Of a stretch of DNA of 64,000 nucleotides, positions 52,376 to 64,000 are shown piece after piece; within the stretch, counting starts at the first letter, position 1, and each line of letters begins with the position of its first letter. The stretch is from positions 1 through 64,000 of the IMG/VR virus record IMGVR_UViG_3300021440_000013. The stretch is one strand, 5' to 3'. The position numbers and the translations under genes were made by a program. The notes below the pieces were generated by a model. The model saw only the letters and a list, made by a program, of their open reading frames with translations, made no database searches and was not told the DNA's origin.

Positions 52376-54301
52376 TTAAATGTGAATTACTAAACTTCCT
52401 GCCTCATCACCGCCATTCTGTGTAAGATAAGCGATAAAGCCCATTGTGCCATCATAACTCAAATAGAGACGGTAGCCAAAGTAGCTGTTTGGGTAGGTCG
52501 CGGGTGGCGTGAACTTGTTCGAGAAATTGAACGCCGTTCCATCGAAAGTATAGACATAAACTTCACCTGAGTTGACATACGGGGTTTGTTTAAGATTAGC
52601 GACGAGCATCTTATTACCCTTAAACTCAACCCGCCCACCAAACTTATCGTTTGACGCCAGATCGTTCGGAACGATCTTCTGTACCTGAGTCCACGTAGTG
52701 CCACTGCGTTTAAAAACATAGATCGCGCCATTAGGCGTATTAGCCGTGGGGTAACACCCTGTGACAACGATGTTTCCGTCACTAGAAAGACCTCCGCTGC
52801 GGGCGCTAAGCATTTTTGAAGTCTCGGAATCAGAGGCTACGAGCTTAGCTTGCTCACTCCATGTTGAACCCGTTCGGGTGTAAATGTAAATGCATCCCGC
52901 GTCTATAAAACCGGAGATATCTGCACCGTGCGCTCCAGCGGCTAGAGTATTTCCATCGCTTGAAAGCGAGAGAAGCTGCCACGCCATATCCTGCCATTGG
53001 TCTGTCTGGGACGGGGAGACTTTAGATTGGAGCGTCCATGTGTTGGAAACGAGGGCGTAGATATACACCGCCCCCTTACCAGCGTCAGCATATGCAGCAC
53101 CTATAGCTATTGTGGTGCTGTCTCGAGAAATTACGGCGGTTGAGCCGTAATGTGCATCGGGCAATAGGTCAGACGGAGTGAGTTTCTGGACAAATAACCA
53201 CACATCCCCTGTACGAGAATAAATGTAAGCGGAACCTTTGTTGATAGCAGTGCCTGTCCAAGCCGGCGCGCAGATAACAGCCAGCGTTCCTTCCGGGTTC
53301 ATTGCCACCCAAAGACCAAACATTTCAGAGGTCAGTGGAACAGGTGCTTTAATGTACTGCTTGTTAGTGTAAACGCCGTTGACGCGTTTATAAAAATAGA
53401 CCGCACCACTATCTAAAGCAGTGTTATCGTCGTTATACGCACCGATAAGGATGTAGTCTTTGTCGTCACTTACAGCAAAGCTGTTGCCAAAACGACTATC
53501 TGGGTAATAGTTCTGCGCAACAAGGCGTTGAATCTCAGTGTTAATCAAACCGTCGTTCCCGGTGGTAAAAGCCACCGGGGTACTCCACGCACTCACCAGA
53601 CCACTTTGGCTCCGGTAGCGGCAACGTACAAAATGTTGGGTTAATTCTTTTATATAGGTAGGCGCCCATTGCGTTAAATCGTTCGAGTTGTAGACACTTT
53701 CAAGGAGTTGATTAAACTCCGTGTTTAAACTAAGCTGCCAGTCACTTCCACTATGTACCGCGTTAGTTTGATCGAGGTTAAAAGTTGACGCAACGATTAA
53801 TACCTTTGAGAAAGAAATCGTGTCACCATTTAAAGGTGACTCAATAACAGGGGTTTCAATCTCAGGCAGAATGATCTGAATGGGATAAGTGCGGCCGTTG
53901 ATGATGATCGCACCGGGTCCTGGTGTCGAGTTTGCCGTGAAGGTGATGACATCCACCTCTCGACTGAGCACTCCGCCTAGACCGATCGCTGTGTAGATCG
54001 CTGAGGTGTCGTAATTGGTGATCGTGTACTGGACGGTTTTGGTCGTGATGACTTGATCTGGTCCAAAGAGGCTCGGAATACTTGGGTCAGAGATCTCAGG
54101 TGGGAAGATATCGCGGGGTAAGAAACCCTGTGCATCGCGCGCAACCGCGCCATTCGGTTTATTAAGGTCTTCCGAACCCAAAAGACGAAGTTTAGCACGC
54201 GCACCCTTAGCGCTAACGCTCCCGGTGCCGCCCTGTTCGATAGGAAGCGCCTCGAGATCACTAAGTTCAGGTCCAAACAAAAAACGGGTCTTAATATCCA
54301 T
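52376..54301 (-). CDS. Tail fibre/receptor-binding protein: GGTG fibre motif + Fn3-like + FG-GAP beta-propeller
   Basis: PIEQGGTG..ARAKL; DWQLS..HFVRCRY..SAWS..FTT; ~7 FG..VA.S.DG..GA..GAVYIY repeats. Confidence 0.75.
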   Translation of the reverse strand: MDIKTRFLFGPELSDLEALPIEQGGTGSVSAKGARAKLRLLGSEDLNKPNGAVARDAQGFLPRDIFPPEISDPSIPSLFGPDQVITTKTVQYTITNYDTSAIYTAIGLGGVLSREVDVITFTANSTPGPGAIIINGRTYPIQIILPEIETPVIESPLNGDTISFSKVLIVASTFNLDQTNAVHSGSDWQLSLNTEFNQLLESVYNSNDLTQWAPTYIKELTQHFVRCRYRSQSGLVSAWSTPVAFTTGNDGLINTEIQRLVAQNYYPDSRFGNSFAVSDDKDYILIGAYNDDNTALDSGAVYFYKRVNGVYTNKQYIKAPVPLTSEMFGLWVAMNPEGTLAVICAPAWTGTAINKGSAYIYSRTGDVWLFVQKLTPSDLLPDAHYGSTAVISRDSTTIAIGAAYADAGKGAVYIYALVSNTWTLQSKVSPSQTDQWQDMAWQLLSLSSDGNTLAAGAHGADISGFIDAGCIYIYTRTGSTWSEQAKLVASDSETSKMLSARSGGLSSDGNIVVTGCYPTANTPNGAIYVFKRSGTTWTQVQKIVPNDLASNDKFGGRVEFKGNKMLVANLKQTPYVNSGEVYVYTFDGTAFNFSNKFTPPATYPNSYFGYRLYLSYDGTMGFIAYLTQNGGDEAGSLVIHI

Positions 54302-54315
54302 GGTTGAATTACTCC

Positions 54316-55548
54316 TTAAGAATACGCACCCAGCTCAAGGAGAACACCTTGGCTATAGTGATAAGGCTGTTGACAATACATCTGGTCGGTGATGTTTTCA
54401 AGGGTATCGCGGGCTTGAAGGGTATGGACGTAGTTCCGATAGTAGCTATCGACCACTGTCACCGACCACACCCCGTCTTCTTTGACTTTCCAATACTCTG
54501 CAAGTCGACCATGACCAACGATAAGTGGATAGGTCGGATCCTGATAGGTACTAAAGATACCTGGAGACTGTATTTGACGAATGCTGATTTTATTAGAAAA
54601 GAGGTTGGGTGTGTCGATAACGACCAAGAAACTCTGTGAAAGCGTCAAGTACCGCTTAAGGACTGCGTCACTATAGACTTCATCGAGATTAATGAGTCTG
54701 TCACTAAGCTCACTCTGGGTGAGCTTAAGTGGACTCAAGTCGATATATTGACGTGCCTCAAAGAGTCGTTCGAGGTAGGGGAGTTGGTTGATATCGAGCT
54801 CAAAGCTTTTATCGCCCGTCTGATAAAAGATGTTCTCTTGCGGCAAAACCATCACGCCGGCTAAGACCAAGATGACGGATTTATGCGTAAGATCCTCTTC
54901 AACAGAGAAGAGGATCTTATCTTTCAGATGCATGTTAGGGCGTGAGGTGATCTTTTCAGGATCAAGCTTAACTTTTGTAACGGCACCGATGTCTAAGAAG
55001 CTCGTTAAACCAAAGTGATTGTGGTTGCAGATTCGGCTACTGACACCCCCGTCGACGATGTAAGCAACTTGGCCATCCGTGTCGGTCATGTGGTAAAAAC
55101 CATTGACCGACACCAGCGCATGACTATGGATCAGTGAGAGGTCCGTGTCAAACTGAGGGCGCGTCAAAACGATGTCGGGTAGTTCTTCACGCGGATAGTT
55201 TTCAGGTGTCACAAAGCCGCGCTTAGCTAAATGTGTCTGATAGCAGGCCCGGTGCATATCGCCATACTTAACGTAGCTTACCTTTTGATCAGGTAAGCTT
55301 GCAAGCGTATCGAGTGTTCGGTTCCCTAAGACTTGAAGTAAGACATTCAGGGTGTTGCCATACGTGGCGTATTCGTCTCGAAGCTGCTCCATATTGACAA
55401 AAACATCTTCGCCAGAAAGATTCAACGTAAGGATGATTCTTCTATAATTCAAAAACAAATTGATCACCAACTCATTTCCGAGACTGGGCGAAACCCATTG
55501 ACTCGCACTTTGGTTGGGTAGTGCGTGCGCTCTAACGAGGCTGTACAT
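54316..55548 (-). CDS. Virion structural protein (gp130-like)
   Basis: ALVSVNGFYH, YLTLSQSFLVVID motifs; inside the fibre cluster. Confidence 0.6.
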   Translation of the reverse strand: MYSLVRAHALPNQSASQWVSPSLGNELVINLFLNYRRIILTLNLSGEDVFVNMEQLRDEYATYGNTLNVLLQVLGNRTLDTLASLPDQKVSYVKYGDMHRACYQTHLAKRGFVTPENYPREELPDIVLTRPQFDTDLSLIHSHALVSVNGFYHMTDTDGQVAYIVDGGVSSRICNHNHFGLTSFLDIGAVTKVKLDPEKITSRPNMHLKDKILFSVEEDLTHKSVILVLAGVMVLPQENIFYQTGDKSFELDINQLPYLERLFEARQYIDLSPLKLTQSELSDRLINLDEVYSDAVLKRYLTLSQSFLVVIDTPNLFSNKISIRQIQSPGIFSTYQDPTYPLIVGHGRLAEYWKVKEDGVWSVTVVDSYYRNYVHTLQARDTLENITDQMYCQQPYHYSQGVLLELGAYS

Positions 55549-55664: not shown

Positions 55665-56396
55665 GTGAGTAGTGTTACCTATCCGTTTGATTCATCGGGG
55701 GTAGCCCCTGAGAATCTCGTGGCAAACGAGCTCCATACGGTAACTGCGATCAACGCCGTCCCGTACCGCATCCTCATCCCTATCTTTGCACCATTTTATC
55801 TCCACAATCTCAAGCTGGAGCACGTCGACTTGACAGGTGTTGTAAAACCCCTGGATGAAGGCGTGGATTTTTATCCTTCGCTTCCTTATATGGCGGCGAC
55901 GCGATCGATCGGTCAGTATCTGTATGGCGGTCTTGTCTTTAACAACGATTTGATGAATGGCACGATCCGCGTTACCTATCAGACGCTGGGGGGTGAGTGG
56001 TGCGCCGATGTAGACTACGTTCACGGCCAGCTCCTTGAAAGTATCTACAACTCGCGTGTCGTCTGGTGGGATCAAATCACCGATAAACAGGGCGTCTTTC
56101 CGCCGATTGAACACAGTCATGATGTAGGGAGTTTTTATGGTCACACGGAGCTTCTGCTGCGCTTAGAAGCGATCCGTGAAGCGATCATGACCGCACCTGC
56201 TTCGGCGCCGGCATCGTATCTTGCACATCTTCTGGATAGCCAAAACCCACACCAGACCAATAAAGCCCAGGTCGGTTTGGGTAACGTACCCAACCTGGCG
56301 CTTGCAACCGACGCTGACGTAGCAAATGCGCTTTTTGAAGACAAGTTTATCACCTTGCGTCAAGTGCTTTTGCTCATGGGTAGAACGCCTCAGTAA
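55665..56396 (+). CDS. Tail fibre anchor-type protein
   Basis: YPFDSSG..NL..E.H, P.FAPFY, YQTLGG, NPHQTNKAQVGLGNV fibre repeat. Confidence 0.7.
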   Translation: MSSVTYPFDSSGVAPENLVANELHTVTAINAVPYRILIPIFAPFYLHNLKLEHVDLTGVVKPLDEGVDFYPSLPYMAATRSIGQYLYGGLVFNNDLMNGTIRVTYQTLGGEWCADVDYVHGQLLESIYNSRVVWWDQITDKQGVFPPIEHSHDVGSFYGHTELLLRLEAIREAIMTAPASAPASYLAHLLDSQNPHQTNKAQVGLGNVPNLALATDADVANALFEDKFITLRQVLLLMGRTPQ

Positions 56397-56453: not shown

Positions 56454-56762
56454 ATGAGCGGTCTTAAGAACAAACTGATTTCCGATGGCACTGTCCAGCT
56501 TCTGGGTACGGTAAGCGACAGCGTCCTGTTTTCCCTGACGACGATCCGGGCCGTGAACCCAACCGCCACGGTTAAAGAGATCACGATCTGGGTCTCTACG
56601 TCACCGACGCCAAGCGACGTTGATTTGGTTGAAGCACCGACGAGCCTTACGCCCAAGGGCCGGTACGAGCAGAACAACCTGCAACTCTCTCCGGGTGAAA
56701 AAGTCTTTGTGTTTGCCCCGGCAGGCGTGGTCTTTCGCATGGAAACCGTCGACGAAGCTTAA
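56454..56762 (+). CDS. Small beta-rich virion protein
   Basis: 102 aa, GGAG SD. Confidence 0.6.
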   Translation: MSGLKNKLISDGTVQLLGTVSDSVLFSLTTIRAVNPTATVKEITIWVSTSPTPSDVDLVEAPTSLTPKGRYEQNNLQLSPGEKVFVFAPAGVVFRMETVDEA

Positions 56763-56794: not shown

Positions 56795-57757
56795 ATGCCG
56801 AGACAGTTGCAGCAAGCGGATCCCTTTATCACTAACTTCACCGATGTCGCCTCCGTTGACAAAGGCGGTACGGGAAGTACCAGTGTGGAGGGTGCCGTAC
56901 AAAACCTCGGTGGGGTCTCACGCGATCTTTTGGGAGTGCCAAACGGTATCCTTCAGACCGACGAACGTGGATTTATCCCTACCGCGGTTCTAAGAGAAGC
57001 GGGCTTTACGATCGGCTACGCGCTTGAAGGACCCGAGTCTCTTACTCACGGTAATGTCAGTGTTTTTCGCATCACTAACTTTAACAGCTTAGCGAAACCC
57101 GTGGTCTCTGTTGACCATGGTTCGGTGAGTGTGGTGGGTGAAGAGATCTTTATCACCGCGCCTCTTTTTGGCGACGCGGTAGTTTTAACCGTTAATGACC
57201 GGCGGATCACCCTTCCGATTTATCAGGATGGGCCCATCCCGCCTAAGATCGTTTATCCGGAAGCGGGTCTAAAGATCCGTAAACGCTCTACGATCGTGTG
57301 TCGTGCGTTTCACAGTGAACCTGAAGCATACAGTGCATGGACGCCTATCGATGCAGTAGGCGGGCTCTATGCCCCTGTGCCGAGCTTGGCAAGCGGTATC
57401 GAAGTGCTGGGTAAACGAGGTCAAGCGGGTGCGGCCTATGTCCGCACTCAGGTAGGCACACACCAGCTCGGTGAGTCGATCACTCGGCGCCGTATCTTTA
57501 AGACACAGGACTCGGAGTTCTATTTCTTTAAGTCAGGTAGTGGTGAGATGCGTTACCGCTGGATCTACCCGATCGCTGAACATGTTTCGACCGATTGGGA
57601 AGTGGCGACCGACAGCGCATTTAGTCAAATCGTTTTTAGTCGCTACTACGATACAGAAAACCTGACCACCTGTGAAGTGAATCTACCGGAAGGGGCTTAC
57701 TTTGTGAGAACGCGCTTTAATGGGCGGCTTGCAGGGGGTACTCCGATTCAAAGTTAG
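56795..57757 (+). CDS. Tail fibre adaptor (GGTG motif + C-terminally incomplete Fn3-like domain)
   Basis: VDKGGTG..GAVQNLG; paralogous to the N-half of 52376..54301 but ends after YFVRTRFNG. Confidence 0.7.
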   Translation: MPRQLQQADPFITNFTDVASVDKGGTGSTSVEGAVQNLGGVSRDLLGVPNGILQTDERGFIPTAVLREAGFTIGYALEGPESLTHGNVSVFRITNFNSLAKPVVSVDHGSVSVVGEEIFITAPLFGDAVVLTVNDRRITLPIYQDGPIPPKIVYPEAGLKIRKRSTIVCRAFHSEPEAYSAWTPIDAVGGLYAPVPSLASGIEVLGKRGQAGAAYVRTQVGTHQLGESITRRRIFKTQDSEFYFFKSGSGEMRYRWIYPIAEHVSTDWEVATDSAFSQIVFSRYYDTENLTTCEVNLPEGAYFVRTRFNGRLAGGTPIQS

Positions 57758-57775
57758 TGGAGTGTTAACAGATGC

Positions 57776-57810
57776 GAGTGACGGGCTTAACGGCCCGTCA
57801 CTCTTCTTTA
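57776..57810 (+). terminator. Terminator hairpin
   Basis: GAGTGACGGGC-TTAACG-GCCCGTCACTC TTCTTT. Confidence 0.75.
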
Positions 57811-57878
57811 ATGTTTAAAATAGGCTTGGGCAAATGGTGTGGTTGGGCGTATAAAACGCTTATTAAGAGATAAGGACA

Positions 57879-59768
57879 GTGGTGATGAAGACAATCGGTG
57901 TTGTGAAGACGGTGGGTTTTCCGAGTAACTTGGGTGCTGGTAAACTTGCTTTGGTTAAAGAAGACGGCCACCTGAACCTGGAATATAAAGGCACTCAGGA
58001 CACTAAGAGCATGCGGGCGAGAAGATCGATTCGTCTTAAAGGAGACGTCTCGATCCCACGAAGCTATCCTGGCCACCCCTACACCTATCAGTATTTGGTC
58101 GAGAACTACGACAGCTTTACCGAGTACAGCGGCTCTACAACGGCCGGCTCAATCGATGTGTCAGGTGAAGGCGTTAACCTTACTACACCGACGACGGGTG
58201 ATAGGCTCTATATCACGATCAATGGTGAAGTCTCACGCGTGATGCTTAGGCAAGCGGTGATTGGAAAACCCATCATCACCTACCCGTTAAACAACGGTGT
58301 CAATGCCCCTTTGGCGTTGGATGTGCTTTTGTCTGGCTATTTTCCGGAAGTTCCTTCTGAGCCCTTCGAGCTTGTTGAGTGGGTGATTGCGTCCGATATA
58401 AATTTCACACAAAACGTAAAGACTTATTCGAAGTCAAGCGCTACCCCACTTTTAAATCTTTCTATCTTTGGTCTATTCAGTAATACACTCCATTATCTTA
58501 GAGTAAGATTTAAAGGAATGCTCTCGGGTTATTCTGAATGGTCGGATACAGTGAGTTTCACTACGGTCTTTTCAGAGATTGTTGGTGTTGAGCAAACAAA
58601 ATTAATCGCAAACGATGGTATAGCCACCGATAACCTAGGTCGTTTTGTGGCGTTAAGTGGTGATGGTAACACCGCCGCATGTGCTGCACCCTACCGAGAT
58701 GATGTTGTAGCAAACTCTGGAGCAATCTACATTTATGTCCGGAATGGTGCTTCTTGGACTTTTCAAACAAAACTTTTAGTAAGTGATCCTACCGTAACTC
58801 TCACTGTGGGGTATAATCTAAAACTCTCTTACGACGGAAACACGCTTGCGATAGGTTCTCCCTTCTCTACTAATAACGGAGCAGGAAGTGGTGCATTCTA
58901 TATCTTTACAAGGAACGGCACGACTTGGAGTCAAGAAGCCAAAGTGTTTCCGGTCGACGGAGTCGCAAACGCTAATTTTGGCTATGCGTTGTCTTTAAGT
59001 CCGGATGGCAATACACTAGCAGTTGGGGCACGAACAGACGACGATTTAGGCACCAACTCAGGGAGTGTTTATCTTTATCTACGGTCAGGTAACACCTGGA
59101 GTAAACAGGCTAAACTGATCGCTGATGATGGCTCGAGTGGCCACGTATATGGTTGTTCTGTTGCTTTAAGTGGGGATGGCAGTACATTGGCAGTAGGGAG
59201 TCCTATTTCTAATGGTATCGTAAATGGATCAGGCTCTGTCTATATTTACATTTTAAGTGGATCGACGTGGATAAAACAGAGTAAACTCATTGCCAATGAT
59301 GGTGTAAACGGCGACAACTTTGGTTATGTAGTCTCACTTAGCGCAGATGGTTCAACCGTACTGATTGGTGCTCCGATTAAAACAACAAGTGGTTCTAATG
59401 GAGGGGGCGCATATATTTTCAAACGCGCAGGGATAAGTTGGTCCCAGCAATCCCATATATTACCCTTGGATAATGCAGCTGGTGATAAATTCGGCTATAC
59501 GGTTTCTCTTTCATATAACGGGCAACTGGCAGCGATTGGGGCGCCCTATAATAACAGCAAAGGAATAAACAGTGGATCCGTCTACATCTACACAGTGGTC
59601 AATACTGTATGGGATCAAAAGCTTAAACTTTCAGCCAGTGATGGCATTGCTGATGATAACTTCGGTATCTCAGTAAGCCTTAATCGAGATGGAAATCAAC
59701 TACTAATCGGATCATGGTATAGTGACCCTAAAGGCTCTAGTAGCGGAGCTGCATATATCTTCATCTAA
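57879..59768 (+). CDS. Tail fibre/receptor-binding protein: Fn3-like + FG-GAP beta-propeller
   Basis: HYLRVRFKG..SEWSDTVSFTT then ~7 repeats KLIA.DG...DNFG..VALS.DG.TLAVGA...SGSVYIY. Confidence 0.78.
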   Translation: MVMKTIGVVKTVGFPSNLGAGKLALVKEDGHLNLEYKGTQDTKSMRARRSIRLKGDVSIPRSYPGHPYTYQYLVENYDSFTEYSGSTTAGSIDVSGEGVNLTTPTTGDRLYITINGEVSRVMLRQAVIGKPIITYPLNNGVNAPLALDVLLSGYFPEVPSEPFELVEWVIASDINFTQNVKTYSKSSATPLLNLSIFGLFSNTLHYLRVRFKGMLSGYSEWSDTVSFTTVFSEIVGVEQTKLIANDGIATDNLGRFVALSGDGNTAACAAPYRDDVVANSGAIYIYVRNGASWTFQTKLLVSDPTVTLTVGYNLKLSYDGNTLAIGSPFSTNNGAGSGAFYIFTRNGTTWSQEAKVFPVDGVANANFGYALSLSPDGNTLAVGARTDDDLGTNSGSVYLYLRSGNTWSKQAKLIADDGSSGHVYGCSVALSGDGSTLAVGSPISNGIVNGSGSVYIYILSGSTWIKQSKLIANDGVNGDNFGYVVSLSADGSTVLIGAPIKTTSGSNGGGAYIFKRAGISWSQQSHILPLDNAAGDKFGYTVSLSYNGQLAAIGAPYNNSKGINSGSVYIYTVVNTVWDQKLKLSASDGIADDNFGISVSLNRDGNQLLIGSWYSDPKGSSSGAAYIFI

Positions 59769-59869
59769 AAGACCTAGGTCTGTTAGATGATGTGGTAAAA
59801 GGAATGATTGAGTTTTTAAAGAGGTGAGTTTAAAGACTCACCTCTATCACTTAACAAGGAGTGAGCAGT

Positions 59870-62800
59870 ATGTCGACATTGGTTGCAAGTGAATGGAGCG
59901 ATGCCGTTGAGTTTACGGTGCGTCCTTTGGGTGAAGGCTATTCAGAAGTGGCAAAGCTGATTCCGATCGAAGGCCAGTCTGACAGTAAATTTGGTCGAGG
60001 TTTGGCTGTCGATGGTGAGGGTGAGTTTATGCTCGCTCCGCTAATGCATTACAACACGCCGTATGTTAAGGCGGGTCGGGTAGATGTCTATCAGCGTTTA
60101 AACAACGTCTGGAAGCGTGTTACGACGATCCAGTCGCCTACGCCTGCGCTTAATGAAGGCTTTGGAGTCCACGCAGCGCTGTCCCGCGACGGCCTGACGG
60201 CCTATATCGGCGCAGAAGGCAATGCGGTAAAGGGATCTAACACGGGCTGCCTTTACATTTTTACCCGACCGACGAAGACGTCTAATAACTGGGTGTATCA
60301 GACGGTGCTTTATCCGGATGACCCCCAGATCAACGGCTACTTTGGAACCTCTGTTGCGGTTTCAAGCGATCAGAAGACCCTTGCGGTCGGTAAAGTCGAA
60401 GACCCGCGATACATAAACGCTGGTATTACTTCTGGTGCGATCTACATCTTTAAAAAAGGCACTGATGGTCTTTGGTATCAAAACCAAAAACTGGTGAGCA
60501 GTGATCTTGGCGGTACGGCACGTCTGGGTCGCGCCATAGCGCTCTCGGGCAATGGTAAAGAGTTGGTTTCCGTAGCGCCCCGCGTATATACCGAAATAAA
60601 CAACCCCTATAATAACACCATCTATCACTTTAGCTTGGTGGGGCCTGTTTACATCCAGACAGCTGTTACGCACTTTCCTGATTCCAAGGACGGTGTGGTT
60701 AATGGCGGTGGCGTGTGTCTTAATGAAGACGGCACGATTATGGCGGCGAGTAACAACTACGACGCCGCGCGTGGTGTGGCTTATACGGGCGACGTCTATA
60801 TCTTCGAGAAGACCGCTTTTTCAGTTTGGACACCCAAACAAAAAATCATCCCGAGAACGGATGCGGCACTCTTCGGAACTGACGTTGCTCTAACCAGCGA
60901 TGGCTCCATCTTGATGGTGGGTGCACGTCTTGACGATACGGCGTCGACCGACTCGGGTGCGATCTATTTTTATGACCGCATCAACGACGGTTTTCAATAT
61001 CAGCAATCTTTGCTACCAAAGACCCCCACTGCTGAAGACCGCTTTGGTCGCGCTATTGCGCTAAACAGCACCGGTGACATGATGATCGTTGGTGCTTTCT
61101 GTGACGACGATGACACGGACCCTACGACGTATCCTGGACTGGGTTCGGCTTACGTCTTTATTCGAAATGGCTCAACCTGGACACAAGTACAAAAGATCAT
61201 CCCTAGTGCCAAGACCGCTTGGGCGTGGTTTGGTATCGATGTGGCTGTAAGTCAGGACGGCGCGATCGCTGTGATCGGTTGTCCGGGTGAGTTGAGCGGT
61301 GGCGTCTCTAAAGGTGGTTTTTACTACTACAAGAATGTGAATGGCTCCTGGGTAGAGACCGCTAAGGTATTTTCGCCCGACGGTGTTTCTGGAGATCAGT
61401 TTGCTACATCTGTTACGCTTGACGCATCTGGAAGCTACCTTATTGTCGGTTGCGCGAAAGATGACACCGCTGCTTTAAACGGTGGTTCAATCTACATTTA
61501 CACACGCTCAGGTGACACCTGGACATTCCAACAAAAGATTACCAGCCCCGAATCCGAAGCTGAAGGTTACTTCGGCTATCGCACAGCGGTTAATGGCGAT
61601 GCTACCGCCATGGCGGTAGGCTGCTATTCTAAGGATGTTAGTGGGCTCACTGACTCAGGCGCCGTTTATTACTACACGCGTTCTGGATCAGCCTGGACAT
61701 ATCGTACGCGCATTACTTCACCACGCTCAGCTGCTGGCGCTGGGTTTGGGCTTGGTTTGGCAATGACGCAAGACGGCAACACGCTCTACGTGGGTGCCTT
61801 TAACGACCTGAATAAGGGTGCAGTATTTATCTTTAACCGTAATGGCTATGTCTGGAACTACGATCGTGAGCTGACTGATCCGCTCCCCATGAGCCTGGCC
61901 CGATTTGGTATTGGACTCGCACTCTCTGGCGATGGTTCGATTCTTGCTGTGGGTGCTGATAATGCTTCGGAAACCCTGCTTCGCGCAGGACGCGTTAACG
62001 TCTATATCAAACCCTCTACCTTCGAGCAGAAGCTTCTCACCGAGCCGTTCATTGAACGCTCTAAGTTCTATGCAGATGACACCAGTGCAGGAGACTATTT
62101 TGGTGTCTCCTGCACCTTAAACGCAGAAGGCGACTACGCGATCGTGGGTGCCTGCTATGACGCAGATAAGGGCACTAACGCAGGTGCCTGCTACGCGTTC
62201 AAGCGCGTAGGGCACAACTGGGTTCAGAAAGCCAAGTTTTATGGCCTAAATACTAAAGAAGGCGATCTTTTTGGCGTCGCGGTTTCGATGAACTCGGATG
62301 CGAACTTCTTGGTTGTTGGTGCACCGGTAGGTAGTACGGAGGGTCGAGTTAATAGCGGCGCGATCTATCTGTTTGATCGTGAAGGTGAGACGTGGCGTCA
62401 ACGTGGCTTGCCTTGGGCACATAGTGAAGCCATCGCTAACAACGGCCGGATCTTTGCTCGGTCGGTGGCCGTTAGTGATGATGGTGTTCACCTTCTTATT
62501 GCCGCCTCTGCGGCTGATCAGGCTCCTGGTGGTCCGGCGTCAGGACTGGTTTACTATGTAACCTATGACGGTTCTGATTTTACTGAGCGTCAGAAGTTCT
62601 GGAGTAGCACCGCAACGCAGAGTGACTACTTTGGCCATGGTCTTTCCATGAGCAAAGATGGTTTGATCGCAATCGTCGGTGCGCCTTATGATGATAATGG
62701 TGTCTTGACCGACGACGGCTCAGCCTTTGTCTTTACTCGGAGTGGTTACACTTGGACCCAGGAACAAAAACTGATTGCGCCTGAGGCAGCTTCAGGTATG

Positions 62801-64000
62801 ACGAGTCTTTGGACTTCCGCGATATCGGGAGACGGCAGCATCATTCTTCTCTCCAGTAATAACAGCGCTGGAATGGGTGCGTTTTATCTTTACAAGCGTG
62901 TTCTGAGTACCTACACGCTGGTTAAGAAACTTTACAGCAAGGATGGCCAGGCGGGAGACGCGCTTAGTTTTAGCTTGGCGCTAAACTACGACGGTGCGGT
63001 AGCGCTCTCTGGCGCGGTGGGTGACGACGATCGGGGTTCTTCCGCTGGCGCAGTCTACACATTTGGGACTGGTGATATCGTCGGAGAAGGGTATCGCCTT
63101 TGCAACACGATCTATTGCCCTGAAGATCAGCGTAGCGTGGGCGATAATTTTGCCGCTGGCGTTGCGCTCTCTGGCGACGGCAACTATGCATTAATCGGTC
63201 GAACCTTTGGCAATGCTAAAAACGGCGATTTCTTCGCATTTGAAAGAAGTGGGGTCGACTGGATCAGCAAAGGTAGTTTCACCGCAAACGATCTTTCTAA
63301 CACCGATTTGTTCGGACTGCAGATTTCAATGAGTTTAGACGCTCAGCATGCGGTCATATCGGCGCAAATGCAGAGTGCTTCATCTCAGCCTGAAGTAGGT
63401 TCAATTTACTACTTCACCCGCAGTGGCGACACCTGGATCCAACAACAAAAGATCGTTTGCCCGGATGTAGAAGCCTACGCTAACTTTGGTGCTGGCTTGG
63501 CAATCTCTGGAGACTCTCTTCACCTTTTAGTTGGTGCTGAAAATAAAGACGTTGGAGGAAACACCGTGGCGGGTAAAGTTTACTACTTTACCCGAAGTGG
63601 AAACACCTGGACACTTGCAAGCAGTTTTACTCAACCCACTGGGCCTGTCGAACCGTGGCGTTTTGGCGGCGGTATTGCGCTTAACTACACGGGTGATTAC
63701 GCCATGGTGGGTGGGGTCTTCACATCGCTAACGGGATACGCTTCCGGCGCAGTGAATGTCCTTAACCGCAGTGGAAACACCTGGACCGGAACAGGACTGA
63801 TTGAAAGCCCTGAAAAGAACAGTGAGTCAACTGCGTTTGGTATTGGTATTGCGATAAGCCGCGATCTTAAGATCGCACTCATCGGCGCTTCGATTGCAGA
63901 TGGACTTTATCGTGACGAAGGTGCGGTTTACCTCTATGAGCGTAACGCCATCACCTATAAGTGGGACTTCGTACGCAAAATCGCACGGCCATTCAGGAAT
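59870..64000 (+). CDS. Giant multi-propeller FG-GAP repeat protein (>1370 aa, 3'-truncated by the window)
   Basis: AAGGAG SD, ATG 59870 MSTLVASEWSDAVEFTV; no in-frame ORF ending inside the window is listed, and the same frame still reads as repeats at the end (YLYERN..WDFVRKI). Confidence 0.8.
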   Translation, partial: MSTLVASEWSDAVEFTVRPLGEGYSEVAKLIPIEGQSDSKFGRGLAVDGEGEFMLAPLMHYNTPYVKAGRVDVYQRLNNVWKRVTTIQSPTPALNEGFGVHAALSRDGLTAYIGAEGNAVKGSNTGCLYIFTRPTKTSNNWVYQTVLYPDDPQINGYFGTSVAVSSDQKTLAVGKVEDPRYINAGITSGAIYIFKKGTDGLWYQNQKLVSSDLGGTARLGRAIALSGNGKELVSVAPRVYTEINNPYNNTIYHFSLVGPVYIQTAVTHFPDSKDGVVNGGGVCLNEDGTIMAASNNYDAARGVAYTGDVYIFEKTAFSVWTPKQKIIPRTDAALFGTDVALTSDGSILMVGARLDDTASTDSGAIYFYDRINDGFQYQQSLLPKTPTAEDRFGRAIALNSTGDMMIVGAFCDDDDTDPTTYPGLGSAYVFIRNGSTWTQVQKIIPSAKTAWAWFGIDVAVSQDGAIAVIGCPGELSGGVSKGGFYYYKNVNGSWVETAKVFSPDGVSGDQFATSVTLDASGSYLIVGCAKDDTAALNGGSIYIYTRSGDTWTFQQKITSPESEAEGYFGYRTAVNGDATAMAVGCYSKDVSGLTDSGAVYYYTRSGSAWTYRTRITSPRSAAGAGFGLGLAMTQDGNTLYVGAFNDLNKGAVFIFNRNGYVWNYDRELTDPLPMSLARFGIGLALSGDGSILAVGADNASETLLRAGRVNVYIKPSTFEQKLLTEPFIERSKFYADDTSAGDYFGVSCTLNAEGDYAIVGACYDADKGTNAGACYAFKRVGHNWVQKAKFYGLNTKEGDLFGVAVSMNSDANFLVVGAPVGSTEGRVNSGAIYLFDREGETWRQRGLPWAHSEAIANNGRIFARSVAVSDDGVHLLIAASAADQAPGGPASGLVYYVTYDGSDFTERQKFWSSTATQSDYFGHGLSMSKDGLIAIVGAPYDDNGVLTDDGSAFVFTRSGYTWTQEQKLIAPEAASGMTSLWTSAISGDGSIILLSSNNSAGMGAFYLYKRVLSTYTLVKKLYSKDGQAGDALSFSLALNYDGAVALSGAVGDDDRGSSAGAVYTFGTGDIVGEGYRLCNTIYCPEDQRSVGDNFAAGVALSGDGNYALIGRTFGNAKNGDFFAFERSGVDWISKGSFTANDLSNTDLFGLQISMSLDAQHAVISAQMQSASSQPEVGSIYYFTRSGDTWIQQQKIVCPDVEAYANFGAGLAISGDSLHLLVGAENKDVGGNTVAGKVYYFTRSGNTWTLASSFTQPTGPVEPWRFGGGIALNYTGDYAMVGGVFTSLTGYASGAVNVLNRSGNTWTGTGLIESPEKNSESTAFGIGIAISRDLKIALIGASIADGLYRDEGAVYLYERNAITYKWDFVRKIARPFRN

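What the first reader, a model, noticed from the sequence alone, without database searches (positions are those of the whole stretch)
56795..59930. Split Fn3-like domain: possible donor-strand complementation linking a fibre adaptor to the giant propeller protein
Seen: complete paralogues read HFVRCRYRSQSGLVSAWSTPVAFTT (52376 gene) and HYLRVRFKGMLSGYSEWSDTVSFTT (57879 gene) before their propellers. The 56795 protein has the same N-terminal architecture but stops after YFVRTRFNG, lacking the final strand. The 59870 protein has no adaptor and starts MSTLVASEWSDAVEFTV, matching that missing strand. Both have good SDs and are separated by a terminator and a third fibre gene. Inference: one ancestral gene was split mid-domain and the products re-associate by strand donation, as in chaperone-usher pili. 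This would give a plug-and-socket system for swappable receptor-binding modules.
Basis: partly seen in the sequence, partly recalled or inferred. Interest (0 to 1): 0.82.

Follow-up and report, generated by a model that had tools for sequence, protein, structure and literature searches.

The report
Split Fn3 plug-and-socket fibre joint
In this uncultured phiKZ-like jumbo phage and its relatives, one small fibre domain is encoded in two genes: an adaptor protein that lacks the last beta-strand, and a huge propeller protein that starts with that strand. The two most likely snap together, as pilus subunits do, which would be a way of attaching receptor-binding proteins that I could not find described for phage fibres.

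Summary

- **The two halves.** The 320-aa adaptor (56795-57757) stops right after strand F of an Fn3-like domain. The 2507-aa propeller protein (ATG 59870) begins with the missing strand G.
- **HMM coordinates.** A 98-position HMM was built from independent complete domains. All 25 adaptor homologues (25-84% identical in the alignment, 309-332 aa) end at position 81-88. All 12 partner N-termini cover 84/87-97.
- **Conservation.** The arrangement recurs in 8 independent loci. In one of them the two genes are adjacent.
- **Fused forms.** Orthologues at the same locus carry adaptor, strand G and propeller in one chain. Split and fused states alternate on the adaptor tree.
- **Structure prediction.** The complex model places partner residues 1-20 against strands A and F (ipSAE 0.71, best control 0.00). 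Alone, those residues have pLDDT about 47.
- **No rejoining.** DNA and metatranscriptome contigs show no joint. Stop codons differ among orthologues.

Ruled out: a decaying relic, recoding or splicing, an assembly artefact.

Open: physical binding, stoichiometry, and whether pairing is strictly adaptor-to-giant. The genome has a second conserved socket family. A relative has a plug gene with no free socket beside it.

The parts
52376..54301 (-). Complete paralogue in one chain: GGTG adaptor, Ig-like domain, full Fn3-like domain (HMM 1-98), FG-GAP propeller
54316..55548 (-). Virion structural protein. It sits in the position of 201phi2-1 gp215, which that record annotates as similar to phiKZ gp130, and so marks the locus as the phiKZ-type tail-fibre locus
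55665..56396 (+). Free-standing 243-aa anchor. It equals the N-terminal ~237 aa of the gp131-family fibre protein 201phi2-1 gp216 (32% identity, E 2e-36)
56454..56762 (+). Conserved 102-aa ORF, always found between anchor and adaptor. It matches no family and its role is unknown
56795..57757 (+). Adaptor or 'socket' protein, 320 aa: N-terminal GGTG motif, Ig-like domain, then an Fn3-like domain that stops after strand F
57242..57322 (+). Fn3 strands A-B of the adaptor (aa 150-176, HMM 1-28). Strand A contacts the plug in the complex model
57323..57574 (+). Family-specific beta-rich insertion of about 85 aa between strands B and C (aa 177-260). It is not in the predicted interface
57575..57727 (+). 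Fn3 strands C-F of the adaptor (aa 261-311, HMM 31-83). Strand F (aa 302-311) is the edge that the plug pairs with
57728..57757 (+). Non-conserved 9-residue tail (aa 312-320) plus the TAG stop. The tail is absent from most homologues
57776..57803 (+). Intrinsic-terminator-like hairpin (12-bp stem, T-rich tail). A hairpin follows the adaptor gene in all seven orthologous loci whose downstream sequence was read
57832..57843 (+). Conserved motif AAATGGTGTGGT, a candidate promoter of the middle gene. An RNA-library contig begins at 57850
57885..59768 (+). Intervening complete fibre gene: a different N-terminus, an Ig-like domain, a full Fn3 (HMM 1-98) and an FG-GAP propeller. The ORF opens at GTG 57879
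59820..59845 (+). Hairpin between the middle gene and the giant gene. It has no T-run
59870..59920 (+). The 'plug': the N-terminal 17 residues of the giant protein, equal to Fn3 strand G (HMM 85-97). S7, W9, S10 and F15 are invariant in 13 partners
59870..64000 (+). Giant multi-propeller FG-GAP protein of 2507 aa. It runs off the window to contig position 67393

Best explanation
The adaptor (56795-57757) and the giant propeller protein (from 59870) are two separately translated parts of one fibre module, joined by a domain that is split between them.

The adaptor folds into an Fn3-like beta-sandwich that lacks its seventh strand (G). This leaves the edge of strand F and part of the hydrophobic core open.

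Residues ~4-17 of the giant protein insert there as strand G, antiparallel to F and next to A. The chain then leaves from the distal pole of the domain straight into the first FG-GAP propeller, exactly as in the single-chain paralogues and fused orthologues.

The adaptor's N-terminal part presumably links to the baseplate through the free-standing gp131-like anchor. The giant protein would then be a distal, receptor-binding part.

Because the joint lies at a gene boundary, propeller genes of very different size (357 aa to about 2500 aa) can be exchanged behind the same adaptor without in-frame recombination.

Shown: the cut, its conservation, its complementarity in HMM coordinates, the fused orthologues, and separate translation signals.
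Predicted: the docking.
Inferred: the position in the virion, the 1:1 pairing and the receptor-binding role.
For: 1. **Conserved cut.** The first search gave 10 homologues at 39-84% identity, all 311-327 aa. All end 3-15 aa after YFVRxRFxG. The profile search added 14 more (309-332 aa), giving 25 split adaptors in all, the most distant 25% identical to the window's.

2. **HMM complementarity.** The HMM was built from 28 complete repeats of other proteins. Complete paralogues cover positions 1-98. All 25 adaptors end at 81-88. All 12 partner N-termini cover 84/87-97. No other of 379 ORF N-termini does so.

3. **Synteny.** Eight loci from different samples carry adaptor, hairpin and partner. In L007 the two genes are adjacent. 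In the other seven a fibre gene of about 600-630 aa lies between them.

4. **Fused forms.** Twelve representative clusters carry adaptor, strand G and propeller in one chain. P0029 sits at the orthologous position, between the 102-aa gene and the downstream genes that include the HDOD gene.

5. **Repeated fission or fusion.** Split and fused states are interleaved on the adaptor tree. Supported branches force at least 6 changes. There are sister pairs of one split and one fused adaptor: P0028/P0029, P0009/P0021 and P0071/P0095.

6. **Plug under selection.** Four of 17 N-terminal columns are invariant, against 11 of 354 in the propeller (p = 0.003).

7. **Complex model.** ipSAE was 0.71, 0.68 and 0.73, against 0.00 for the best of 3 controls. 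That mark was reached by 58 of 80 solved complexes and 2 of 110 mismatched pairs. The interface is adaptor residues 145-169 and 297-314 with partner residues 1-20.

8. **Partner alone.** Residues 1-20 have pLDDT 47-48, while nearly all of the propeller is at 80-97 with a few loops at 54-69.

9. **No joint.** No contig of a DNA run or a metatranscriptome run skips the region between the two genes. RNA contigs break at the terminator-promoter gap.
Against: - There is no experimental evidence of binding or of presence in virions. The phage is uncultured, and no cultured relative exists in the phage collection.
- The complex score is a model's own confidence. It may partly reflect recognition of a familiar Fn3 fold, and it used my own shallow alignments.
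- AF2 models the adaptor alone confidently (pLDDT 88.5) and folds 3 tail residues (317-319) into a short strand.
- Some relatives (P0012, P0015, P0019, P0026, P0036) lack strand G in this same domain although the chain continues into more Fn3 domains. The domain may therefore tolerate an open edge.
- Pairing is not proven to be exclusive. The genome has another conserved G-less socket (L002 8167-8751). In L022 a plug-bearing propeller gene follows an adaptor that is already fused.
Confidence: 0.75

Rival explanations
1. The plug-and-socket principle holds but the pairing is different or promiscuous. The giant's N-terminal strand would fill another socket of this phage, for example the conserved 194-aa G-less Fn3 protein at contig ~140.6 kb. 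The 56795 adaptor would be filled by a plug encoded in the unseen part of the genome, or several plugs would compete for several sockets.
For: - A second socket family exists in the same contig and is conserved, with no plug next to it.
- Multi-Fn3 shafts such as P0013 and P0067 end in cut Fn3 domains with no plug nearby.
- L022 has a plug gene directly after an already complete, fused adaptor.
- Only about 88 of 217 kb of the contig could be read.
Against: - Adaptor and plug genes are syntenic in 8 of 8 loci and adjacent in L007.
- Fused orthologues join exactly this adaptor type to a propeller.
- The complex model for this pair passes its controls.
Confidence: 0.12
2. The truncated Fn3 is a stable six-stranded variant that needs no seventh strand. 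The conserved N-terminal strand of the propeller proteins would then have another role, such as capping their own propeller or binding a different structure.
For: - The adaptor alone is modelled confidently.
- Class-3 relatives keep the domain G-less inside a longer chain.
Against: - The plug aligns to HMM positions 85-97 of the same domain family, in the same register as cis G strands.
- Fused orthologues place it directly after strand F.
- Alone it is not confidently packed on the propeller (pLDDT 47-48).
- In the complex model it contacts strands A and F.
Confidence: 0.08
3. The two genes are decaying halves of a fibre gene broken by insertion of the 57879 gene, and they have no function together.
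For: - A complete fibre gene and a terminator lie between the halves.
- The stop codon sits in a string QS*WS that looks like a mutated SEWS.
Against: - The cut end and the plug are conserved across 25 and 12 sequences down to 24-38% identity.
- The nearest relative has TAA followed by unrelated sequence, so QS*WS is a coincidence.
- The junctions share no DNA similarity.
- Both ORFs are intact and have Shine-Dalgarno sites.
- The region is present in a metatranscriptome.
Confidence: 0.02
4. A single polypeptide is made by read-through, ribosomal bypass, RNA splicing or DNA rearrangement that joins 57757 to 59870.
For: The two reading frames would give a complete domain if they were joined.
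Against: - The gap is 2.1 kb and holds a whole gene.
- Orthologues use TAG, TAA or TGA.
- Read-through of TAG meets TGA after 7 codons.
- An in-frame TAA at 59852 precedes the plug.
- Every plug gene has its own ATG, and those inspected have a Shine-Dalgarno-like site.
- No joints appear in DNA or RNA contigs.
Confidence: 0.01

Closest known systems
Donor-strand complementation and exchange in chaperone-usher pili (Pap and Fim subunits; my own knowledge of Choudhury 1999 and Sauer 1999/2002)
   Same: An Ig-like beta-sandwich lacks its C-terminal seventh strand. The groove next to strand F is filled by an N-terminal extension of the next subunit, which gives a canonical fold and a very stable non-covalent joint.
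   Different: - This is a cytoplasmic phage fibre, not a periplasmic pilus.
- No PapD-like chaperone or usher is in the locus.
- It is a hetero-pair rather than a polymer.
- The domain is an Fn3-like phage repeat.
- Natural single-chain (fused) orthologues exist.
Contractile-sheath 'handshake' (beta-sheet augmentation by N- and C-terminal arms; PMC10811340, PMC13266070)
   Same: Terminal strands of one tail protein become integral strands of a domain of another.
   Different: That case is a homotypic mesh of sheath subunits with no split-versus-fused gene pair. It does not attach receptor-binding proteins.
phiKZ gp131-family tail fibres (PMC13250141; Sycheva 2012 as cited there)
   Same: - The locus is the same, next to the gp130 homologue.
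- The N-terminal anchor domain is the same.
- The distal domains are beta-propellers.
   Different: - In phiKZ-type phages the anchor and the distal part are one chain.
- Here the module is spread over anchor, a 102-aa protein, adaptor and propeller proteins.
- A joint inside an Fn3 domain is not described in that paper.
'Genes in pieces' in phages (Aeh1 NrdA split by mobE, split RNA polymerase subunits of phiKZ-like phages, T4 topoisomerase genes 39/60; my own knowledge)
   Same: One functional protein or domain is encoded by separate genes whose products reassemble. Unsplit homologues exist elsewhere.
   Different: - No homing endonuclease or intron lies between the halves.
- The break is inside a small beta-sandwich, so reassembly has to be by strand insertion.
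Adaptor-based attachment of receptor-binding proteins (SP6/K1-5 adaptor, G7C gp63.1/gp66, CBA120 tailspikes; my own knowledge)
   Same: A conserved adaptor carries exchangeable receptor-binding proteins.
   Different: Those systems dock folded N-terminal domains onto the adaptor, not a single strand completing the adaptor's own domain.

Membership tests
Fn3-like repeat of phage fibre proteins (the DWEVATD...YYVRxRY...SEWS..V.FTT type) | Match to a profile of complete repeats over strands A-G | tested here: met
   The paralogues cover HMM 1-98. The adaptor covers 1-28 and 31-83. The plug covers 85-97. Together they cover the whole domain.
Donor-strand complementation (mechanistic class) | An Ig-like fold that lacks its C-terminal strand | tested here: met
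   All 25 adaptors end at HMM 81-88 of 98. The tail after strand F is short and not conserved.
Donor-strand complementation (mechanistic class) | The missing strand is supplied by the N-terminal extension of a partner subunit | tested here: met
   All 12 partners start with HMM 84/87-97 within their first 2-6 residues. This is specific among 379 N-termini.
Donor-strand complementation (mechanistic class) | The strand physically lies in the groove next to strand F | tested here: inconclusive
   This rests on a model only. ipSAE was 0.71 against 0.00 for the controls, and the interface is adaptor strands A and F with partner residues 1-20. No structure or binding assay exists.
Chaperone-usher pilus family (homology) | A PapD-like chaperone and an usher, with periplasmic subunits carrying signal peptides | tested here: not met
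   No Pfam hit of that kind occurs in the seven locus proteins scanned. The proteins are phage virion-module genes. The system works like this family but is not a member.
phiKZ gp130-gp135 tail-fibre locus | Synteny with the gp130 homologue and a gp131-like N-terminal anchor domain | tested here: met
   The 54316 gene matches phiKZ-like virion proteins. The anchor equals the N-terminus of 201phi2-1 gp216 at E 2e-36, next to gp215 (the gp130 homologue).
phiKZ gp130-gp135 tail-fibre locus | The distal propeller is homologous to the gp131 C-terminal seven-bladed propeller | not tested
   The propellers here are Pfam FG-GAP_2. The profile search of solved structures found only integrin alpha propellers. 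No structural comparison with gp131 was made.
Gene split by a mobile element (homing endonuclease, intron, intein) | An endonuclease, intron or intein sequence between the halves | tested here: not met
   The intervening gene is a fibre protein. In L007 only 106 nt with a hairpin separate the halves.
Programmed recoding or bypass | A conserved stop or slippery context with an open continuation | tested here: not met
   Stop codons differ among orthologues. TGA follows 7 codons after TAG. No joined RNA was found.

The most novel reading that the evidence does not exclude
The G-less Fn3 end and the N-terminal G strand may be a general connector standard of a large group of mostly uncultured phage fibres.

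- Adaptors, short 194-aa proteins and long multi-Fn3 shafts all end in the same open socket.
- Propeller proteins of any size carry the plug.
- Sockets and plugs encoded at different loci would combine.
- Relatives whose G-less domain is internal would act as branch points, with one branch in cis and one plugged in trans.

Such a standard would explain how these phages build and reshuffle branched multi-receptor fibres. It would also give a natural, orthogonal, covalent-free coupling tag.
Probability: 0.35. Interest if true: 0.85.

Novelty: new variant of a known kind. Interest (0 to 1): 0.75.

Why it matters
How phages attach and exchange receptor-binding proteins decides host range, and it is a central problem in fibre evolution.

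A joint made by splitting a domain at a gene boundary would let whole propeller genes be swapped by recombination in intergenic DNA, behind a constant adaptor. The repeated fission and fusion seen here is a natural experiment showing that the two forms are interchangeable.

It would extend donor-strand complementation, so far a hallmark of pili and of sheath meshes, to phage fibres.

The system is directly testable with two small recombinant pieces. It could also serve as a compact protein-coupling module.

Tried and rejected
- **Recombination scars at DNA level.** Local alignments between the two junctions and the paralogous Fn3 ends scored no better than shuffled sequence. A recent split or duplication in this genome is rejected.
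- **QS*WS as a mutated SEWS.** Rejected, because the 84%-identical relative has TAA followed by unrelated sequence.
- **Cultured relatives.**
  - Megablast and tblastn of the adaptor found nothing in 50,697 phage records.
  - The propeller found only an unrelated siphophage FG-GAP protein without a plug.
- **IMG/VR census.**
  - Besides the source contig and its own second locus, the single-protein scan gave only two unrelated contigs whose Fn3 domains are complete.
  - The profile scan gave only loci without a G-less socket end. One 90-aa ORF is cut at HMM 69.
  - The plug alignment was too divergent for a scan.
- **Structural neighbours.** Only generic tandem Ig/Fn3 receptors at low TM-score turned up.
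- **Two-strand plug idea.** I asked whether the N-terminal hairpins of the middle-type proteins could be plugs for sockets cut before strand F. The Fn3 HMM gives no support.
- **The motif AAATGGTGTGGT as a genome-wide promoter.** It is not clearly enriched in the window: 9 matches against 4.9 expected.
- **Literature.** Five searches found no paper on donor-strand or strand complementation in tail fibres.
- **Pfam and PHROG.** They gave no family for the adaptor beyond a weak hit to a beta-propeller repeat protein PHROG.
Full report
**Source and setting**

The window is the first 64 kb of IMGVR_UViG_3300021440_000013, a 216,876-bp contig, and window coordinates equal contig coordinates. The sequencing runs that hold it are labelled freshwater metagenome.

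The 410-aa protein on the minus strand at 54316-55548 is 26-30% identical to virion structural proteins of phiKZ-like jumbo phages such as RP12, Noxifer and PhiPA3.

The 243-aa protein at 55665-56396 equals the first ~237 residues of 201phi2-1 gp216, a 738-aa protein (32% identity, E 2e-36). In that phage gp216-gp220 are paralogues lying next to gp215, the phiKZ gp130 homologue.

[quoted passage not shown] The finding therefore lies in the tail-fibre locus of a very distant phiKZ-like phage. No near relative exists among 50,697 phage records.

**The observation**

- The 320-aa protein of 56795-57757 ends YFVRTRFNG plus ten residues and TAG.
- The ORF from ATG 59870 starts MSTLVASEWSDAVEFTV. 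It continues for 2507 aa to contig position 67393.
- The 641-aa (52376, minus strand) and 629-aa (57879) proteins carry the uninterrupted string ...R.R...SxWSxxVxFTT, followed by FG-GAP propellers (Pfam PF14312, E 3.6e-42 and 2.3e-87).
- Both halves have Shine-Dalgarno sites 8 nt upstream of ATG.
- An in-frame TAA at 59852 closes the frame upstream of the plug.
- A 12-bp-stem terminator follows the adaptor gene.

**Is it really one domain in two pieces?**

I built a 98-position HMM from 28 complete internal repeats of four unrelated multi-Fn3 fibre proteins: P0012, P0013, P0042 and P0067.

- The two complete paralogues, and a third in the contig's second fibre locus, cover positions 1-98.
- The adaptor covers 1-28 (aa 150-176) and 31-83 (aa 261-311). 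An insertion of about 85 aa lies between these two parts.
- The giant's residues 4-16 cover 85-97.

The two pieces therefore complement each other with neither overlap nor gap. Among the N-termini of 379 ORFs of at least 100 aa from the window and the fetched loci, only the partner genes match positions 84-97.

**Conservation**

A search of 5.8 billion proteins gave ten homologues of the adaptor, 39-84% identical. All are 311-327 aa long and all end 3-15 residues after strand F. The GGTPIQS tail is not conserved.

A profile search of 1.84 billion representatives added 14 more proteins of 309-332 aa with the same cut end, giving 25 split adaptors in all. The most distant is 25% identical to the window's in the 42-sequence alignment.

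Genomic contexts were fetched for eight independent loci: the window, L005, L006, L007, L008, L011, L012 and L017.

- All show the same order: a propeller fibre (minus strand), the ~412-aa protein (minus strand), the ~241-aa anchor, the ~102-aa ORF, the adaptor, a hairpin, and downstream a propeller protein.
- That protein begins M-x(2-5)-S-[EP]-W-S-x4-F-x-[VI].
- In seven loci a complete fibre gene of 599-632 aa lies between adaptor and partner.
- In L007 the partner is a single 357-aa propeller that follows the adaptor directly, after 106 nt.

More single-propeller proteins with this N-terminus exist elsewhere: P0158, P0207, P0248, P0260 and P0270.

In a 13-sequence alignment of partners, which are 24-77% identical to the giant, S7, W9, S10 and F15 are invariant. 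That is 4 of 17 N-terminal columns, against 11 of 354 in the propeller (Fisher p = 0.003).

A relic would not keep both the exact cut and the orphan strand across this divergence.

**Fused orthologues**

The same profile search found twelve representative proteins in which this adaptor, including its insertion, runs through YYxRxRY...SxWS..V.F.V into an FG-GAP propeller in one chain. Most are 665-737 aa, two are 972 and 978 aa.

P0029 (737 aa) lies at the orthologous position. It comes after the anchor and the 102-aa gene, and before the same downstream genes as in L007, among them the HDOD gene.

On a maximum-likelihood tree of 42 adaptor domains, split and fused forms are interleaved. Well-supported branches force at least six changes of the 'split' state. 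There are sister pairs of one split and one fused adaptor: P0028/P0029, P0009/P0021 and P0071/P0095.

Fission or fusion at this exact loop has therefore happened repeatedly. This is what one expects if the two forms give the same folded object.

**Structure predictions**

- **Adaptor alone.** With a 42-sequence alignment, AF2 models it at mean pLDDT 88.5. Strand F is at 303-312. Its own tail forms only a three-residue strand.
- **Partner alone.** The giant's first propeller (aa 1-371) is modelled at pLDDT 86.3 and pTM 0.88. Residues 1-20 have pLDDT 47-48, so the strand is not confidently part of the propeller.
- **Complex.** The job used adaptor 76-320 plus giant 1-371.
  - It scored ipSAE 0.71, 0.68 and 0.73, against 0.00 for the best of three controls.
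  - That mark was reached by 58 of 80 solved complexes and 2 of 110 mismatched pairs. The counts hold only roughly, because my own alignments were used.
  - The confident contacts are adaptor 145-152, 154-166, 168-169, 261-276 (scattered), 292 and 297-314, with partner 1-20, 77-78, 346 and 369.
  - These are strands A and F, the neighbours of strand G in an Fn3 fold.
  - The model supports binding but does not show it.

**Exclusion of rejoining**

- One DNA run holds the region in a single contig without differences.
- In a metatranscriptome run, one contig ends at 57757. Nothing covers 57758-57849, which holds the terminator and the conserved motif. Further contigs start at 57850 and at 58024, and the latter runs across the boundary between the middle gene and the giant gene.
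- No joints were reported.
- These are assembled contigs, so the absence of rare forms is not proven. An RNA library can also contain DNA.
- Orthologues use TAG, TAA or TGA. Read-through of TAG would meet TGA after seven codons.

**What I think it is**

It is a two-gene fibre joint in which the N-terminal strand of the distal propeller protein completes the Fn3-like domain at the C-terminus of the adaptor.

In an Fn3 fold, strand F ends at the pole where the domain began, and strand G carries the chain to the far pole. This is textbook topology and my own inference here. The plug therefore enters at the proximal pole and delivers the propeller distally, as in the one-chain forms.

It works like donor-strand complementation in chaperone-usher pili. 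It is not a member of that family, because there is no chaperone, no usher and no periplasmic context.

Strand donation as such is common in tails. Examples are the sheath handshake (PMC10811340, PMC13266070) and beta-sheet augmentation in lambda (PMC10721106). Five full-text searches found no report of it joining fibre proteins.

**Open points**

1. **A second socket family.** The same contig has a 194-aa protein (L002 8167-8751) that ends at HMM 83. Its four homologues are 62-95% identical, and their last 26 residues are almost invariant. It is preceded by a conserved 191-aa protein cut at HMM 65. No plug gene is nearby.
2. **Long shafts.** The multi-Fn3 proteins P0013, P0042 and P0067 have complete internal repeats but a cut last repeat, again with no adjacent plug.
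3. **A plug without a local socket.** In L022 a plug-bearing 420-aa propeller gene follows an adaptor that is already fused.
4. **Internal G-less domains.** Five relatives lack strand G in the insert-bearing Fn3 although the chain continues.

These points suggest that sockets and plugs may combine across loci, and that the adaptor-to-giant pairing, although favoured by synteny, is not proven to be exclusive. Only about 88 of 217 kb of the contig could be inspected.

**Verdict**

It is a new variant of a known kind of mechanism, of high interest, and it awaits a simple binding or structure experiment.

Noticed in passing
L002 8167-8751 and 7572-8147 (contig 140579-141163 and 139984-140559): There is a second conserved socket family in the same phage. 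A 194-aa protein ends at HMM 83 (...YYVRIQHFGKKP stop). Its last 26 residues are nearly invariant in 4 homologues. It is preceded by a conserved 191-aa protein whose Fn3 is cut earlier, at HMM 65. No plug gene is nearby. Next come a 364-aa anchor-like protein and a 636-aa complete fibre.
   Followed up: partly
L022 10233-11495: In a relative whose adaptor is fused to its propeller (P0029), the next gene is a 420-aa FG-GAP protein that starts MTIVTSDWSGAIRFTI. This is a plug with no free socket in the locus.
   Followed up: no
P0012, P0015, P0019, P0026, P0036 (relatives; L017 1363-2589 for P0036): In these relatives the insert-bearing Fn3 lacks strand G although the chain continues into further Fn3 domains. 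P0026 and P0036 also end in a cut Fn3. This could be a branch point, or a sign that the domain tolerates an open edge.
   Followed up: no
P0013, P0042, P0067 (L015 232-4716, L016 1267-3846): These long fibre shafts of 7-13 Fn3-like repeats have complete internal repeats, but the last repeat stops after strand F (...YYLRARYKGSSSL stop). The next gene is an anchor-like protein, not a plug.
   Followed up: partly
window 57832-57843 (also 59785-59796, with 2 mismatches): The motif AAATGGTGTGGT lies 60-80 nt after the adaptor stop. It is exact in two orthologous loci and near-exact in two more. An RNA-library contig begins at 57850. It is a candidate phage promoter, but it is not clearly enriched in the window (9 matches against 4.9 expected).
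   Followed up: partly
window 55665-56396: The gp131-like N-terminal anchor domain is a free-standing 243-aa protein here and in all relatives (238-256 aa). In phiKZ-type phages it is the N-terminus of proteins of about 450-740 aa. This is a second fission in the same fibre module.
   Followed up: partly
window 56454-56762: A 102-aa beta-rich ORF with no Pfam or PHROG match lies between anchor and adaptor in every locus where that position could be read. It shows no similarity to 201phi2-1 gp217, which sits at the matching position. Its role is unknown; it could be structural or an assembly factor.
   Followed up: partly
window 57323-57574 (adaptor aa 177-260): A beta-rich insertion of about 85 aa sits between strands B and C of the adaptor's Fn3. 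It is conserved across the family and modelled with high confidence. It is not in the predicted plug interface, and its function is unknown.
   Followed up: no
window 59870-64000 and on to contig 67393: The partner is a 2507-aa protein made almost wholly of FG-GAP repeats, enough for about six or seven propellers. Relatives have 2013-2497 aa. Other relatives carry a single 357-420-aa propeller on the same plug.
   Followed up: partly
window 57879-57887: The middle fibre ORF opens at GTG 57879. The AAGGA site at 57872-57876 and the orthologues' N-termini point to ATG 57885 as the start.
   Followed up: partly
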